This document shows, in pieces, positions 48,040 to 52,415 of a stretch of DNA of 64,000 nucleotides. The position numbers were made by a program, and so were the translations under genes. How positions within the stretch are numbered: the first letter of the stretch is position 1; the number at the start of each line of letters is the position of its first letter. The stretch is taken from positions 1-64,000 of the forward strand of contig OZ059900.1 of assembly GCA_964057225.1 (NCBI GenBank), in the 5' to 3' direction. The notes beneath the pieces are model-generated. The model was not told the DNA's origin, ran no database searches, and worked only from the letters and a program-made list of their open reading frames with translations. The DNA is from Auanema rhodensis. Lineage: Eukaryota > Animalia > Nematoda.

Positions 48040-48056
<17 letters not shown>
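48040..48056 (+). repeat. Target-site duplication, left copy (GTGACGCGCATGAATGG; right copy 52384-52400)
   Basis: 17-bp direct repeat flanking the insert; occurs once in uninserted units. The last two G's merge with the element's G run, so the true length is about 15-17 bp. Confidence 0.95.
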
Positions 48057-48057
48057 G

Positions 48058-48133
48058 GGGGGGGAATGTTCAACCTCTACGGGGTCCCTTCTAGATAGCC
48101 GACTGGATCTCCGGTTGGTGAACTGATGAACAT
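48058..48133 (+). ncRNA. HDV-like self-cleaving ribozyme (predicted) at the element 5' end
   Basis: P1 G7 (within the G run 48055-64)/CCCTTCT 48086-92; P2 ATGTTCA 48066-72/TGAACAT 48127-33; P3 ACC 48073-75/GGT 48083-85; L3 TCTACGG; P1.1 CT 48077-78/AG 48093-94; P4 GCCGACTGG 48098-106/CCGGTTGGT 48111-119; J4/2 GAACTGA with candidate catalytic C48123. Confidence 0.85.
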
Positions 48134-48420
48134 GGGGTTTGCCCAAAAGGTACTGTCTATAATTCGATGGGACAGAACTAATGGAATGGCAAACTGGCAA
48201 ACCTAGTATACCACCAACAATGCCTGTCTGTTGGAGATTCTCAAAATGACCAAAAGTCGGACTGAGATTCTATGGTATACGCAACTTAAACCGTGCGGGC
48301 GTAACGTAAGTAGCCATCATATCCTATAGGATCGCACACTCTGCTCGAAATTTAGTATGGTGCCTTCAGAGAGTCGGGAACACTCTCTGTCGACCACGTT
48401 AAAACGTTAGTATCCCAAAA

Positions 48421-51400
48421 ATGAAAGTTAGTATCGTGGATAAGAGTGTTAATACGGGAGGAATACGCCGAAGCGCTGTTCTTCCCGTCAACGCTATCCG
48501 CGAGACACCCAGGTCGCTATCGTCCGTGGCGGCTGTTGGTGAACGTAAAGCGAACGGCTCTCTGGAAATAAGCCACCTAGAGACTGAACCTGAAAGTTTA
48601 ACGCGAGGGTTTCAGAGAATTGGCCAACTCGATGAAGATGCTTTGCATCCGAGGGTCGTCACATCGGGGGGGTCTTCGGGCCCAGCACTTAGTACAGAGA
48701 GAGACAAAAAGCATATCTCTGGAATCCCTGAACGTAGCGTCCGCCTTAATGGAGGTCGCAGTGCGATGTGGACAAAAACCGAGGAACTTTTTCTAGAGGA
48801 CACAGTTCAGAAATGCACTAGGTCTGAAGGTAAAAGAGAAACAGATTGGCCCTTGGTGGAAGTTCACTGGTCAGACGCAAAGAAACTTGGCTTGGTAGCT
48901 GCGCGGTCACGCAACGCAATCAAGGCTAAGTGGAGAGCGCTCCGACTTCGTCGTGAACGCGAAACAATAAAACTGGTCGAGGTTCCTGACAGAGCCGAGG
49001 ACACCGGTAGACTGGCCCTTGTCGAGGCGTCGGAAGACTCTGAGGACACTTGTGAGCCCAGTCCTATTAAGGATCTAGCAGATCCTACTCCTGAAGAGTG
49101 GTTTAGAGTTCGCTTTTGGCGTGTCTTTGATCGGACCAAAACGAACAAGACCTGTCCTACTCCACTCCGAAGATTGAACCCTAAAAAGTTAAAGAGCCTA
49201 ATCCCCTTAGCGGACTCATTAATTGAAGAAAGCTTAGTTAAAGAAGGCAACTCAATGCTGGTGGTCACTAACGCCATTCGCGCTGTTCACAGTGTGATCC
49301 AACAAGGCCATCACATTGAGAGAAAGAAGGAAAAGGAGGAACTGGACCAATGGTTCCAGAAGAATAGAGCAAAGGCACAACGCCTTAGAACGCTGGCCTC
49401 CTGGGTGTCTCAAGAGCTCCTACGACGTGAGAGAGGTTTCGACCCGACTCCATCGCAAAGGAAGATTCTTAGAGCGCTCAAGAAAGAAACTAAGCTAAGT
49501 AAAAGGAACCTCATCTCATTTCGGGTCAGGTGCACCGAACGTCTCCAAATATTGAACAGTAAACATCAGAGACGGAGTGAGGAAAGAACGAGAATTAATG
49601 AGCGAGCGAAAGGAAAAGTTCAGAAGCGGACCGATAGTGTATCTACTGACTTGTCGATCGAGAGAATTAAGAACTACTGGAGCGGGATAATTGGTGAGCA
49701 CCGTACCTGGGATCAGGAACATAGTGCACTCTCAGACTGGGGCAGAGAGATGAGGTGTAAGAACAGCCCTCAATCACCGATTTCCCAAGATGCGTTGGAT
49801 AAATGGTTCGATCAGGCAATGAAGAAGGTGCGCCCTTGGAAAGCGACTGGGCCGGATGGAGTATTTGGTTTTTGGTGGAAGTCTCTTCCGAGCTGCCGCC
49901 GAGCCTTATACCTATGGATCCGAGACTGTTTAGTTGGTCGGTGTAACATCGATCAGTGGCTATTGCAAGGCAGAGTTGTACTGTTGGCGAAAAAACCCAA
50001 TCCCTCGGGAGAAGGTGACTATAGACCCGTTGCGTGCTTAAACACTTCGGTAAAATGTCTCACCGGCGTCCTCACCCTTGTCGCCTCCGAAAGAGTTGCT
50101 TCGATACTTCCAATGGAGCAATTAGCGCTGCGAAAGAAATGCTGGGGAGTTACCCATGCACACGTGCTGGATTCCGCCCTCCACACGGACTGTTACACTT
50201 CGAAACAGTCATTATCATCTTGCTGGATTGATTTCGCTAAAGCTTTTGACTCGATACCACATAATTACATCTTGTGGTGCTTAAAACAAATTGGGCTGAC
50301 CACCCGACTTGTGGAATTATATCGTTGCTTCTTAAATAAGTTGAAAGTCAGGTTCGAAAGAGTAGGTGAAGCTGGGGTAGAGAAGAGCACATGGCTAAGA
50401 GTTAAGAATGGTGTCCCACAAGGTGATTCGTTGAGTCCTTTGTTATTCTGCCTTGCCATCGCCCCGATCTCCCATTTTCTTAATAAAAAATATGCGAGCG
50501 ATGGCTATCGGTTCTATCGTAGGTTAGATGATATGACGCCGGAAATTAATCACTTGTACTATGTTGATGATTTAAAAGTATATGCCAAAGACAGAGAGTC
50601 TTTGCACGAGATCATCAAAGGGATCCGATCTGTAACTACTGCAATCGGACTGAAACTGAATGATAAGAAGTGCGCTGAAGTGCACTTGAACACCGCTCCG
50701 GGAGTCAACGTCTTCCCCTCACTTAATGAAGGAGAGACTTATAAGTACCTAGGATTAGAACAAAGAGGTACTGTTGACCAGAAGACAATACATGAGCGAG
50801 TAAGAACAAAAGTTCTAACACTTCTTAGAGGAATAACGAGTAGTAGATTGACGATTCGTCAGATCGTCTCGAAGTGCAATGTAGAGGTAATGCCAGCCTA
50901 TAGGTTTGTTTGCACCAACCAGTTCTCTGGCATGGGCACAGGCATAAGGTTCGACTCGGTGGTGAAGAGTGCTAAGTCCTTAGACGTGGATATTCGTGGG
51001 ATCCTCCATGAAGCCCGTCTCATCTTCAGAACCTGTAACAGCAGCAGACTCTACCTCACGCCTTCTGAAATGGGCTTAGGCCTATATTCGGCAGTGCATG
51101 TCTTGGAGGATGCAGTTGTTTACGCATACTGCTACGTTGCATTGAAGGACGATTTGATGTTCGCTTTCGACTTATTCGAGCATCATTCAGATAGGGGCAA
51201 GCGTACAGTGGTGAGCGATTTCCGGACGATTATGAGTAAGTACGGGATCAAGTTCCAACGGGTTCAAGTCCTGTGGACTCCTCAAGTTAGAGTAGATGGG
51301 AAGACGTTTTGCAGCCCCACTCAGGCTGCGCAGTATATCACATCCTTACTGCAGAAACATCGTACCACTTCACTTCTTGAAGAGATTGAGAGTAAGCCGG

Positions 51401-52197
51401 TCGGTGGCCGAGTCTTCAGAGATCCTGCGATAGACCGATCTTTAAGCGCGCTATGGTTGAGTAAAGGCATGGTTGGGAAAAAGACTTTCCGGAACATAAT
51501 AGGCATGCAAGAAAATCAGCTGATGGTCAGGGGCCACCCTGGATCATTGGCCAAAAACTGTCGGCTTTGTCCGGCAGCCCTAGAAACCGCAGAACATGTG
51601 GTCTCAGTATGTCCTAGGTTCCGCCCGACTTTAATGCTGGAGCGACACAATAGCGTAGCTCGTAATATATATTGGTACCTCTGCAAGGTATATAATTTAC
51701 CATCTGTACACTATACCCAGAGAGTACCCGAAATTGTTTCCAATGAGCGAGTCGACATATGGTGGGATCGGTATGTTACTGTTCCAACCACGCTTACATG
51801 CTATAGGCCTGATATTGTCGTTTTCGACAAAATAGCAAAGCGAATCTATGTCGTAGAAGTTGGTGTATGCTGGTTTAGCAGACTAAATGTAACTACGGAG
51901 AGGAAGTACAGTAAGTATGCTGTGAACTCTACTGTGGCAGATTCATCACCGTTGCCATATTATGTTGGACCGAACTTGGCAGGCGAACTCCAGAAAATGT
52001 ATAAAATGCTGGTGGAGGTGATCCCAGTCGTGGTGGGCTGTGGAGGTGAGTTCGCTAGCTCAAGTACGGAATGGTTGCGAAAGCTCCCAACCGCTAATAT
52101 GAGCGACGTGAGAAGACTACAAGAACGACTAGCTCGTTCCGCGGTGATTGGCTCTGACCGCTTAATAAGAAATCATTTGGCTGTTAAACAAGTGTAG
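48421..52197 (+). CDS. Retrotransposon protein: Myb/SANT-like domain, reverse transcriptase, CCHC zinc knuckle, PD-(D/E) restriction-like endonuclease (1,258 aa)
   Basis: RT motifs KATGPDG, YRPVACLN, WIDFAKAFDSIPH, GVPQGDSLSPLLF, YVDD (50560-50571), YKYLG; C-X2-C-X8-H-X4-C (51559-51612), RHN, RPDIV...VEV, KYSKY. ATG in AAAAATG context after an in-frame TAA at 48400. Confidence 0.96.
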   Translation: MKVSIVDKSVNTGGIRRSAVLPVNAIRETPRSLSSVAAVGERKANGSLEISHLETEPESLTRGFQRIGQLDEDALHPRVVTSGGSSGPALSTERDKKHISGIPERSVRLNGGRSAMWTKTEELFLEDTVQKCTRSEGKRETDWPLVEVHWSDAKKLGLVAARSRNAIKAKWRALRLRRERETIKLVEVPDRAEDTGRLALVEASEDSEDTCEPSPIKDLADPTPEEWFRVRFWRVFDRTKTNKTCPTPLRRLNPKKLKSLIPLADSLIEESLVKEGNSMLVVTNAIRAVHSVIQQGHHIERKKEKEELDQWFQKNRAKAQRLRTLASWVSQELLRRERGFDPTPSQRKILRALKKETKLSKRNLISFRVRCTERLQILNSKHQRRSEERTRINERAKGKVQKRTDSVSTDLSIERIKNYWSGIIGEHRTWDQEHSALSDWGREMRCKNSPQSPISQDALDKWFDQAMKKVRPWKATGPDGVFGFWWKSLPSCRRALYLWIRDCLVGRCNIDQWLLQGRVVLLAKKPNPSGEGDYRPVACLNTSVKCLTGVLTLVASERVASILPMEQLALRKKCWGVTHAHVLDSALHTDCYTSKQSLSSCWIDFAKAFDSIPHNYILWCLKQIGLTTRLVELYRCFLNKLKVRFERVGEAGVEKSTWLRVKNGVPQGDSLSPLLFCLAIAPISHFLNKKYASDGYRFYRRLDDMTPEINHLYYVDDLKVYAKDRESLHEIIKGIRSVTTAIGLKLNDKKCAEVHLNTAPGVNVFPSLNEGETYKYLGLEQRGTVDQKTIHERVRTKVLTLLRGITSSRLTIRQIVSKCNVEVMPAYRFVCTNQFSGMGTGIRFDSVVKSAKSLDVDIRGILHEARLIFRTCNSSRLYLTPSEMGLGLYSAVHVLEDAVVYAYCYVALKDDLMFAFDLFEHHSDRGKRTVVSDFRTIMSKYGIKFQRVQVLWTPQVRVDGKTFCSPTQAAQYITSLLQKHRTTSLLEEIESKPVGGRVFRDPAIDRSLSALWLSKGMVGKKTFRNIIGMQENQLMVRGHPGSLAKNCRLCPAALETAEHVVSVCPRFRPTLMLERHNSVARNIYWYLCKVYNLPSVHYTQRVPEIVSNERVDIWWDRYVTVPTTLTCYRPDIVVFDKIAKRIYVVEVGVCWFSRLNVTTERKYSKYAVNSTVADSSPLPYYVGPNLAGELQKMYKMLVEVIPVVVGCGGEFASSSTEWLRKLPTANMSDVRRLQERLARSAVIGSDRLIRNHLAVKQV

Positions 52198-52383
52198 TAG
52201 CTTGAAATTGCTCTGTTGTCACAGAAGCTGAGGTGGGCAGTCTTAATGACTGCTTACATTTAATGGGCCGGGTTCTTCATTGAACTCGCGAAACTCGTAG
52301 AGTTGAGCGACCTATGACTTTAATGGGAGTAGGTTGTACCCGTAGTATGCCCCGGTAACGGGGTAACCAAAACGTTTACACAC

Positions 52384-52415
<32 letters not shown>

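What the first reader, a model, noticed from the sequence alone, without database searches (positions are those of the whole stretch)
48040..52400. Intact, probably recent R4-type retrotransposon in one of seven 28S genes
Seen: uninterrupted 1,258-aa ORF with the catalytic motifs present, both UTRs, an exact TSD, and flanking 28S essentially identical to uninserted units. Established: R4 was described as a 26S-specific RLE element of Ascaris and related parasitic nematodes, inserting between the R2 and R1 sites. The target GTGACGCGCATGAATGG is conserved in eukaryotic 28S, including human. Inference: a likely active and probably uncatalogued family member from a rhabditid-type host, and a candidate site-specific RNA-templated insertion tool with a target distinct from R2.
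Basis: partly seen in the sequence, partly recalled or inferred. Interest (0 to 1): 0.8.

Follow-up and report, generated by a model that had tools for sequence, protein, structure and literature searches.

The report
Intact R4-type retrotransposon in nematode 28S
One of the seven 28S rRNA genes in this window carries a complete, recently copied "jumping gene" of the known R4 type, which always lands at the same spot in 28S. It is a new lineage of a known kind, and one of at least five such lineages sharing that spot in this nematode genome.

Summary
Window 48057-52383 is a 4,327-bp non-LTR retrotransposon inserted in sense orientation in the 28S gene at 45664-53490. It is flanked by the exact repeat GTGACGCGCATGAATGG (15-17 bp are true target duplication). 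It has a 364-nt 5' UTR, an uninterrupted 1,258-aa ORF and a 186-nt strongly folded 3' UTR without poly(A).

The protein has a Myb-like N-terminal domain with no zinc finger, an RT with YVDD, a CCHC knuckle and a PD..E..K restriction-like endonuclease. Its predicted fold matches R2 TPRT complexes. In trees it lies in a nematode clade whose checked members sit at the same 28S site; its sister group includes a (TAA)n-flanked, Dong-like element. Solved R2 proteins are far more distant.

The genome holds 5 copies (3 full-length, 2 truncated), all in 28S, differing by 3 substitutions or fewer and showing at least 4 different 5' junctions. That indicates recent activity. No RNA data exist.

Four further lineages (B-E, 31-41% identical) use the same site. 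A and B share a nearly identical ribozyme-bearing 5' leader, and one A copy is an A/B mosaic.

This scan had already noted R4-type elements elsewhere in this genome. Verdict: new member of a known kind. The tool idea and the catalogue status are untested.

The parts
48040..48056 (+). Left copy of the target-site duplication (28S sequence GTGACGCGCATGAATGG). The last GG may belong to the element.
48057..48133 (+). Junction G run (8 G) plus an HDV-like self-cleaving ribozyme fold. P1 is the G run pairing with 48086-92. P2 is 48066-72 with 48127-33. P3 is 48073-75 with 48083-85. L3 is 48076-82. P1.1 is 48077-78 with 48093-94. P4 is 48099-106 with 48111-118. J4/2 is CTGA, with the candidate catalytic C at 48123.
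   Evidence: The script check of every pair, with compensatory changes in lineage C, is. Rfam models do not detect it. R4 and Dong are reported to carry 5' HDV-like ribozymes (PMC3774820).
48057..48420 (+). 5' UTR, a leader module shared with lineage B: about 97% identity over nt 1-167 and about 85% over nt 168-364. Similarity ends at the start codon.
   Evidence: fold z = -2.2
48421..52197 (+). Single ORF of 1,258 aa, with the stop codon at 52195-52197.
   Evidence: AF2 model pLDDT 89; best structural matches are R2 TPRT complexes
48766..48966 (+). Myb/SANT-like three-helix domain (aa 116-182). There is no C2H2 zinc finger upstream of the RT.
49993..50760 (+). Reverse transcriptase domain (Pfam RVT_1, aa 525-780), with YVDD at aa 714-717 (50560-50571).
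51559..51612 (+). CCHC zinc knuckle (aa 1047-1064). C, H and C are invariant and the second C nearly invariant in a 75-sequence family alignment.
51805..51918 (+). Restriction-like endonuclease core RPD..E..K (aa 1129-1166). P1130, D1131, K1162 and Y1166 are invariant in the family alignment.
52198..52383 (+). 3' UTR of 186 nt. It is strongly structured, has no poly(A) or repeat tail, ends ..TTTACACAC, and shows no complementarity to the 28S flanks beyond chance.
52384..52400 (+). Right copy of the target-site duplication. The 3' junction is identical to the base in all five lineages of this genome.
45664..53490 (+). The interrupted 28S rRNA gene, the host of the element. It shows one base difference (46867) from uninserted units.

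Best explanation
Window 48057-52383 is a full-length, coding-competent copy of a previously unrecorded lineage ('A') of the R4 group. These are site-specific non-LTR retrotransposons with a restriction-like endonuclease that live at one fixed position of nematode 28S rRNA genes, between the R2 and R1 sites.

Likely mechanism (shown = read from sequence or tool output; inferred = by analogy with R2/R4 biochemistry):
1. The element has no promoter signal of its own and lies in sense orientation in 28S, so it is co-transcribed with the pre-rRNA by Pol I (inferred).
2. An HDV-like ribozyme at its first about 77 nt, whose P1 helix uses the junction G run, cuts the co-transcript at or within a few bases of the 5' junction. 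The fold is shown; cleavage is inferred.
3. The uncapped RNA is translated into one 1,258-aa protein with a Myb-like DNA-binding domain, RT, linker, CCHC knuckle and PD-(D/E)xK endonuclease. The domains are shown; the mode of translation is unknown.
4. The protein binds the structured 186-nt 3' UTR and nicks the bottom strand exactly before GTGACGCG. It then primes reverse transcription directly on the 3' end of the RNA without a poly(A) tail. The base-exact 3' junction is shown in every A copy and in representative copies of all five lineages; the chemistry is inferred.
5. The top strand is cut 15-17 bp downstream, which gives the duplication. The cDNA end is joined upstream, often with extra G residues or with 5' truncation or target deletion (junction variety shown).

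The lineage has been active very recently.
For: - Anatomy and exact repeat.
- Catalytic residues are invariant in a 75-sequence family alignment and present in A.
- The AF2 model has pLDDT 89 and pTM 0.83. Its best PDB matches are R2Tg, R2Pm and R2Bm TPRT complexes, with E from 1e-31 to 1e-27 over about 880-1,230 aligned columns.
- Sequence search: 334 relatives, the best at 45% identity. Named hits are nematode proteins at about 33-38% identity, mostly strongylid (Haemonchus, Ostertagia, Trichostrongylus, Ancylostoma, Heligmosomoides).
- The contigs of the two best hits end at |GTGACGCGCATGAATGG; the H. polygyrus contig ends within 1 nt of that point.
- Trees: A lies inside a nematode clade (91 of 118 rows, support 99; 35 of 45 rows, support 100). 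A, B and P0002 group together (support 97). The sister group contains an element flanked on both sides by (TAA)n, the Dong signature.
- Solved R2 proteins match A only over the RT, at E from 1e-23 to 1e-13. The Dong-like P0097 matches at 2e-73 over 98% of the region searched (aa 450-1258).
- The ribozyme fold was verified pair by pair in A, B and C, with compensatory changes in P1, P1.1, P2 and P4. R4 and Dong are reported to have 5' HDV-like ribozymes that cut at the element's 5' end (PMC3774820).
- Recent activity: 5 copies, all in 28S, with 3 substitutions or fewer in the ungapped comparisons apart from the B-type 5' tract of copy C21a. There are at least 4 distinct 5' junctions: G8; GAG7 with a B-type leader; a truncation at nt 622 joined through about 9 G to 5.8S; and a truncation at nt 1611.
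- An independent run carries the whole element with 1 difference.
Against: - No named Ascaris R4 sequence, and no NeSL, CRE, HERO, Rex6 or R2 reference, could be placed in the tree. The name 'R4' therefore rests on the site, the architecture, the strongylid relatives and the Dong-like sister group. My memory of the 1995 paper (not held) supplies the exact Ascaris site and the report of R4-site insertions in Haemonchus.
- No RNA run holds the element, and only assembled contigs were available, so transcription, ribozyme cleavage and current activity are not observed.
- The two copies with identical junctions (C8 and C24) could be rDNA unit duplicates.
- Rfam's HDV models give no hit.
- The Myb call for A itself is below Pfam's threshold (E 0.15). 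The Foldseek rows for that domain are Myb/TRF domains but not significant.
Confidence: 0.83

Rival explanations
1. It is an R2-clade element that switched its insertion site, as R8 and R9 did, and not a member of the R4/Dong clade.
For: The whole-protein fold is most similar to R2 proteins. R2 also has a Myb domain, a CCHC knuckle, an RLE and a 5' HDV-like ribozyme (PMC10499050, PMC3774820). No R2 sequence could be included in my trees.
Against: R2 proteins of three species match only the RT, at E from 1e-23 to 1e-13. A (TAA)n-flanked Dong-like protein matches nearly end to end at 2e-73 and forms the sister group. A lacks the N-terminal C2H2 finger of R2. The R2 structures are simply the only RLE-type elements in the PDB.
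Confidence: 0.06
2. The element is intact but no longer mobile, and its copies were multiplied only by unequal crossing-over or gene conversion of rDNA units.
For: Copies C8 and C24 have the same 5' junction and differ by one base. rDNA units are homogenised. No RNA evidence exists.
Against: At least four different 5' junctions exist, including two independent 5' truncations, which are the signature of separate TPRT events. All five copies, truncated ones included, read without a stop. Divergence is 0.07% or less.
Confidence: 0.1
3. It is an assembly artefact or a contaminant placed into the rDNA array.
For: rDNA arrays are hard to assemble, and the window lies at a contig start.
Against: The same element with the same junction occurs on four contigs of the assembly. 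It is also held by 11 public runs of 3 studies, one of which covers it fully. Both flanking 28S halves are continuous with the array.
Confidence: 0.01

Closest known systems
R4 of Ascaris lumbricoides (Burke, Muller and Eickbush 1995; GenBank U29445) and R4-site insertions reported in Parascaris, Haemonchus and Strongyloides
   Same: The host is a nematode. Insertion is in sense orientation in the large-subunit rRNA gene between the R2 and R1 sites. There is a single ORF with RT, a C-terminal CCHC knuckle and a restriction-like endonuclease. A 5' HDV-like ribozyme sits at the element's 5' end, and there is no poly(A). Strongylid relatives (Haemonchus and others) fall in the same clade, and the one checked (H. 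polygyrus) sits within 1 nt of the same site.
   Different: The protein is at most 45% identical to anything in a 5.8-billion-protein collection and about 37% identical to strongylid elements. It coexists with four other lineages at the same site.
Dong of Bombyx mori and Dong-like elements ((TAA)n-specific, R4 clade)
   Same: The sister group in my trees includes a Dong-like member. The ORF plan is the same (RT, CCHC, RLE). Dong is reported to have a 5' HDV-like ribozyme (PMC3774820).
   Different: The target is a (TAA)n microsatellite (seen for P0097), not 28S. Identity to A is about 26%.
R2 (R2Bm, R2Tg, R2Pm; solved TPRT complexes 8GH6, 9DOU, 9NL2/3)
   Same: They share the overall fold and domain order (Myb, RT, linker, CCHC, RLE). 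They share TPRT on a structured 3' UTR without poly(A), co-transcription with rRNA and a 5' HDV-like ribozyme.
   Different: The insertion site is 26 bp further downstream in 28S. There is no N-terminal C2H2 finger. Sequence identity is only 16-17%, and only the RT is detectable by sequence search.

Membership tests
R4 (28S-specific RLE non-LTR retrotransposons of nematodes; R4/Dong clade) | Sense-orientation insertion at one fixed site of the large-subunit rRNA gene, between the R2 site (..TTAAGG|TAGCC..) and the R1 site | tested here: met
   The 3' junction lies 26 bp downstream of the R2 motif, before GTGACGCG. The identical junction is found in all 5 A copies, in lineages B-E, and in contigs of P0001 and P0002; the H. 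polygyrus contig (P0018) ends within 1 nt of it. That this is base-for-base the Ascaris site rests on memory; the 1995 paper is not held.
R4 (28S-specific RLE non-LTR retrotransposons of nematodes; R4/Dong clade) | Single ORF with a central RT, a C-terminal CCHC motif and a PD-(D/E)xK restriction-like endonuclease, and no APE endonuclease | tested here: met
R4 (28S-specific RLE non-LTR retrotransposons of nematodes; R4/Dong clade) | RT / C-terminal phylogeny groups with R4 and Dong, apart from R2, NeSL, CRE and HERO | tested here: inconclusive
   A lies within a nematode clade whose checked members sit at the 28S site, with a sister group that includes a (TAA)n Dong-like element. R2 proteins are much more distant. 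No named R4_AL, NeSL, CRE, HERO or Rex6 sequences were available to include.
R4 (28S-specific RLE non-LTR retrotransposons of nematodes; R4/Dong clade) | 5' HDV-like ribozyme that cuts at the element's 5' end (reported for R4 and Dong, PMC3774820) | tested here: met
   The complete nested double-pseudoknot fold starts in the junction G run, and helices covary between lineages A/B and C. Catalysis itself cannot be tested with these tools.
R4 (28S-specific RLE non-LTR retrotransposons of nematodes; R4/Dong clade) | Defined 3' end without poly(A), plus a short target-site duplication | tested here: met
   The element ends ..TTTACACAC directly at 28S, with a 15-17 bp duplication.
R2 | Insertion at the R2 site of 28S | tested here: not met
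   The R2 motif at 48009-48018 is uninterrupted; the insertion is 26 bp downstream.
R2 | N-terminal C2H2 zinc finger(s) preceding the Myb domain (PMC10499050) | tested here: not met
   There is no C2H2 pattern, and only 4 scattered Cys, in the first 440 aa. The same holds for lineages B-E.
Dong | Insertion into (TAA)n microsatellites | tested here: not met
   The flanks are 28S. (TAA)n flanks are seen only for the outgroup element P0097.

The most novel reading that the evidence does not exclude
The 5' leader (ribozyme plus about 290 nt) behaves as a freely exchangeable module among R4 lineages that compete for one 28S site. It would move between lineages either by gene conversion seeded in the identical upstream 28S flank or by RT template switching. 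Its ribozyme P1 would be built from a G run that is laid down, or lengthened, at integration itself. The all-pyrimidine partner strand (CCCTTCT) then tolerates any register, so each new insertion regenerates a working self-cleavage site. If so, UTR and ORF have separate evolutionary histories, and the element's RNA start is defined by the integration chemistry.
Probability: 0.25. Interest if true: 0.55.

Novelty: new member of a known kind. Interest (0 to 1): 0.38.

Why it matters
R4 has been known since 1995 but is little studied compared with R2, which is now being engineered for RNA-templated transgene insertion into 28S.

This window gives a clean, complete natural example with defined ends, both UTRs, a confidently modelled protein and four sister lineages at the same site in one genome. 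That is useful comparative material for two questions: how RLE elements read a target without an N-terminal zinc finger, and which RNA parts are protein-specific (the 3' UTRs differ between lineages) and which are interchangeable (the 5' leader is shared).

It does not change what is known about the kind of element. Its use as a tool, and the conservation of the target in other organisms, were not tested here.

Tried and rejected
- Rfam, at both gathering and E-value thresholds, found no HDV or other family in the element. The ribozyme was therefore checked by explicit pairing.
- ARAGORN found no tRNA-like head in A.
- I tested for a 3' UTR antisense to the 28S flanks, a feature earlier notes reported for other lineages. 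For A, the local alignment score of 14 is below the shuffle mean of 16.8. RNAduplex was no better than 18-21% of shuffles. Rejected for A.
- A 13-nt match (one mismatch) between the 5' UTR and the complement of the R2-site region was judged to be chance.
- The original R4 papers (PMC307436, PMC306301, PMID 8524653) are not held.
- Two literature searches for R4 nomenclature returned only noise.
- P0046 (H. contortus) could not be traced to a contig.
- One batch Rfam call on 12 loci failed internally and was replaced by BLAST.
- Read laying returned only assembled contigs. It gave no inserted fraction, no 5'-truncation profile and no RNA ends.
- Organism names of the runs are coded, so the host species was not identified.
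- Foldseek on the isolated N-terminal domain gave Myb/TRF rows, but at E around 1.
- I did not compare any sequence with human DNA, so the claim that the target is conserved in human 28S is left untested.

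
Full report
**Observation**

Rfam finds seven complete eukaryotic LSU rRNA genes in the window. Six are 3,482-3,483 bp long. The seventh spans 45664-53490 (7,827 bp). Against an uninserted unit (37270-40752), the left part is identical through 48056 except for one base at 46867, and the right part is identical from 52384 on.

The insertion is 48057-52383 (4,327 bp). The 17-mer GTGACGCGCATGAATGG stands at 48040-48056 and again at 52384-52400. One ORF of 1,258 codons runs from 48421 to 52197. 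That leaves a 364-nt 5' UTR and a 186-nt 3' UTR, which ends ..TTTACACAC with no A tail or repeat.

**The protein**

- Pfam sees only RVT_1, at aa 525-780.
- Motif scans give YVDD at 714, a CCHC knuckle at 1047-1064 and RPD..E..K at 1129-1166.
- In an alignment of 75 family members, the two Asp of YVDD, C1047, H1059, C1064, R1075, H1076, P1130, D1131, K1162 and Y1166 are invariant, and C1050 is nearly so (numbering is alignment position plus 59).
- AlphaFold2 on that alignment gives a confident model of aa 60-1258, with mean pLDDT 89 and pTM 0.83.
- The best PDB matches are the R2 proteins of zebra finch, turtle and silkmoth caught during target-primed reverse transcription. E-values run from 1e-31 to 1e-27 over about 880-1,230 aligned columns at 16-17% identity. 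LINE-1 ORF2p follows well behind.
- Upstream of the RT there is a three-helix domain at aa 116-182, with the W..W..W/Y spacing of Myb/SANT domains.
- Eight of 30 family members hit Pfam Myb families (best E 8e-6). A itself reaches only E 0.15.
- Foldseek on the isolated domain lists TRF1, TRF2 and Myb domains on top, but without significance.
- There is no C2H2 finger in the first 440 aa of A, nor in its four sister lineages. R2Bm has one before its Myb domain (PMC10499050).

**The RNA ends**

The first 77 nt fold into the nested double pseudoknot of HDV-like ribozymes:
- P1 is the junction G run pairing with CCCTTCT (48086-92).
- P2 is 48066-72 with 48127-33.
- P3 is ACC with GGT, enclosing a 7-nt L3.
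- P1.1 is CT with AG.
- P4 is 8 bp.
- J4/2 ends in CTGA, with the candidate catalytic C at 48123.

I checked every pair by script in lineages A, B and C. P1, P1.1, P2 and P4 differ between A/B and C yet remain paired, while P3 is unchanged. Because P1's 3' strand is all pyrimidine, the G run can pair in four registers in A.

Rfam's models do not detect the fold. Eickbush and colleagues report that Ascaris R4 and Bombyx Dong carry HDV-like ribozymes that cut at the element's 5' end (PMC3774820).

The 3' UTR folds far better than shuffles (z = -4.2). It has no complementarity to the 28S flanks beyond chance. The 'antisense tail' that other agents saw in other lineages of this genome is therefore not a feature of A.

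**Copies in the genome**

The assembly (181 Mb, 112 contigs) holds five copies of A, and all have the same 3' junction in 28S:
- C8 (this copy) and C24 are full-length with the same 5' junction and differ by one base. That base is element position 1247 = window 49303, a Gln/Lys codon.
- C21a is full-length with three substitutions and a different 5' end.
- C21b starts at nt 622. It is joined through about nine extra G to the middle of the 5.8S gene, with 2.6 kb of rDNA missing.
- C64 starts at about nt 1611 and is joined to 28S at ..GCATGAAT.

All five copies, truncated ones included, read without a stop. At least four different 5' junctions with 0.07% divergence or less indicate several recent, independent insertions rather than mere duplication of one rDNA unit.

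The first look counts about 426 ITS2 copies in the assembly, so A occupies roughly 1% of units.

Eleven public runs from three studies hold the element. The one that covers it fully differs only at 49303. No RNA run and no raw reads were available, so neither expression nor the inserted fraction could be measured.

**Sister lineages**

A protein search of the genome finds four more lineages with long open frames:

| Lineage | ORF length (aa) | Identity to A |
|---|---|---|
| B | 1,289 | 39% |
| C | 1,270 | 40% |
| D | 1,275 | 31% |
| E | about 1,205-1,266 | 33% |

D and E are 50% identical to each other. Every one has exactly the same 3' junction, |GTGACGCGCATGAATGG. Full-length A, B and C copies follow ..ATGG at the 5' side, and truncated copies keep 10-15 bp of the repeat.

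Most of the C, D and E copies I fetched sit in a second, diverged rDNA array (87-92% identity) at C8:10.98-12.6 Mb. One C copy lies outside rDNA on C3 and starts GGGAAC. This shows that the terminal GG belongs to the element, so the real duplication is probably 15 bp.

**Leader exchange**

A and B proteins are only 39% identical. Their first 167 nt are nevertheless about 97% identical, and the rest of the 5' UTR is about 85% identical. Similarity stops at the start codon. The 3' UTRs are unrelated.

Copy C21a of A carries the B state at the first four diagnostic sites (23, 26, 69, 135) and the A state from 157 on, apart from one B state at 206. The leader is therefore being exchanged between lineages.

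I infer one of two routes: gene conversion seeded in the identical upstream 28S flank, or template switching of the RT near the RNA 5' end. The 3' UTR, which must be recognised by each lineage's own protein, stays lineage-specific.

**Relatives elsewhere and the name**

The word-based search of 5.8 billion proteins returns 334 relatives. The best is 45% identical. Named hits are nematode proteins at about 33-38% identity: strongylids (Haemonchus, Ostertagia, Teladorsagia, Trichostrongylus, Ancylostoma, Heligmosomoides), plus Meloidogyne, Bursaphelenchus and Caenorhabditis auriculariae. The contigs of the two best hits end at the same 28S junction; the H. polygyrus contig ends within 1 nt of it.

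In a FastTree of 118 proteins and an IQ-TREE of 45, all of these form one clade (support 99 and 100). A groups with B and P0002 (support 97). D and E are sister to the strongylid elements (support 100).

The sister group contains P0097, whose element is flanked on both sides by (TAA)n, the hallmark of Dong. It also contains P0094, whose element abuts the 3' end of an 18S gene.

Solved R2 proteins match A only in the RT, at E from 1e-23 to 1e-13. P0097 matches at 2e-73 over 98% of the region searched (aa 450-1258).

Together with the site, the architecture and the ribozyme, this places A in the R4/Dong group. Two things rest on my memory of Burke et al. 1995: the exact Ascaris site, and the report of R4-site insertions in Parascaris and Haemonchus. 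The paper is not held. A review also lists R4 in Strongyloides (PMC10946416). I could not add named R4, NeSL, CRE, HERO or R2 sequences to the tree, and I could not query Repbase or Dfam.

**Host**

The canonical 22-nt nematode SL1 leader occurs 1,267 times in tandem arrays, against 0 for the reversed control. The host is therefore a nematode. Run and organism names are coded, so the species stays unknown.

**Verdict**

The finding is real and correctly read. It is an intact, very recently active R4-type element, a new lineage of a known kind. This scan had already reported R4-type elements at other places of the same genome (for example s1-429781), and my results agree with those reports.

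What this analysis adds:
- the full parts list;
- a confident protein model with an R2-like fold but no N-terminal zinc finger;
- five lineages sharing one base-exact site;
- direct evidence of leader exchange between lineages A and B.

The proposal that it could serve as an insertion tool at a site conserved in other organisms is untested.

Noticed in passing
G000:C8:10.98-12.6 Mb (loci L029, L031, L034-L036, L039, L040): There is a second, internal rDNA array whose units are only 87-92% identical to the window's rDNA. It is heavily loaded with full-length and truncated copies of lineages C, D and E. It may be a decaying array that serves as a refuge for the elements.
   Followed up: partly
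G000:C21:33905-37610 (locus L004): A 5'-truncated copy of A (from nt 622) is joined through about nine extra G residues to the middle of the 5.8S gene, with 2.6 kb of ITS2 and 28S deleted. This is an aberrant integration with an upstream target deletion.
   Followed up: yes
G000:C16 (locus L038, about 1645-1803 and 6738 on): A lineage C copy in a main-type rDNA unit has 28S continuing 123 bp past the normal site before the element starts. This gives a target duplication of about 141 bp instead of 15-17 bp.
   Followed up: partly
G000:C3:21.57 Mb (locus L037, about 2005-6942): A full-length lineage C copy lies outside rDNA, with no 28S flanks, next to an inverted partial copy of itself. This is an off-target insertion, and it shows that the element RNA starts with GGGAAC.
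   Followed up: partly
G000:C8:4439315-4443098 (locus L028): A degraded relative of lineage B (96-97% identical, with stop codons) lies 4.4 Mb into the chromosome with only fragments of 28S nearby. ARAGORN finds no tRNA in A's homologous leader.
   Followed up: partly
locus L030 about 1400-2560 / L039 about 770-1930: Lineage D carries an array of roughly 214-bp tandem repeats upstream of its ORF. Its true 5' end was not found.
   Followed up: no
locus L044 (TARA metagenome scaffold; protein P0094): A relative from the sister group sits about 500 nt upstream of the 3' end of an 18S rRNA gene followed by ITS1. It may be an 18S-specific lineage of the R4/Dong group in a marine eukaryote.
   Followed up: no
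G000:C3:6.74 Mb: The SL1 spliced-leader sequence occurs 1,267 times, mostly in a tandem array with a 252-bp period.
   Followed up: no
window 48362-48374: A 13-nt stretch of the 5' UTR is complementary, with one mismatch, to the 28S sequence at the R2 site about 30 nt upstream of the insertion. It is probably chance.
   Followed up: partly
G000:C12 (locus L027): One lineage B copy has a G run one base longer than the other two. The 28S just upstream carries a small deletion at the R2-site motif (..CTATGATGAAGGTAGCC..).
   Followed up: no
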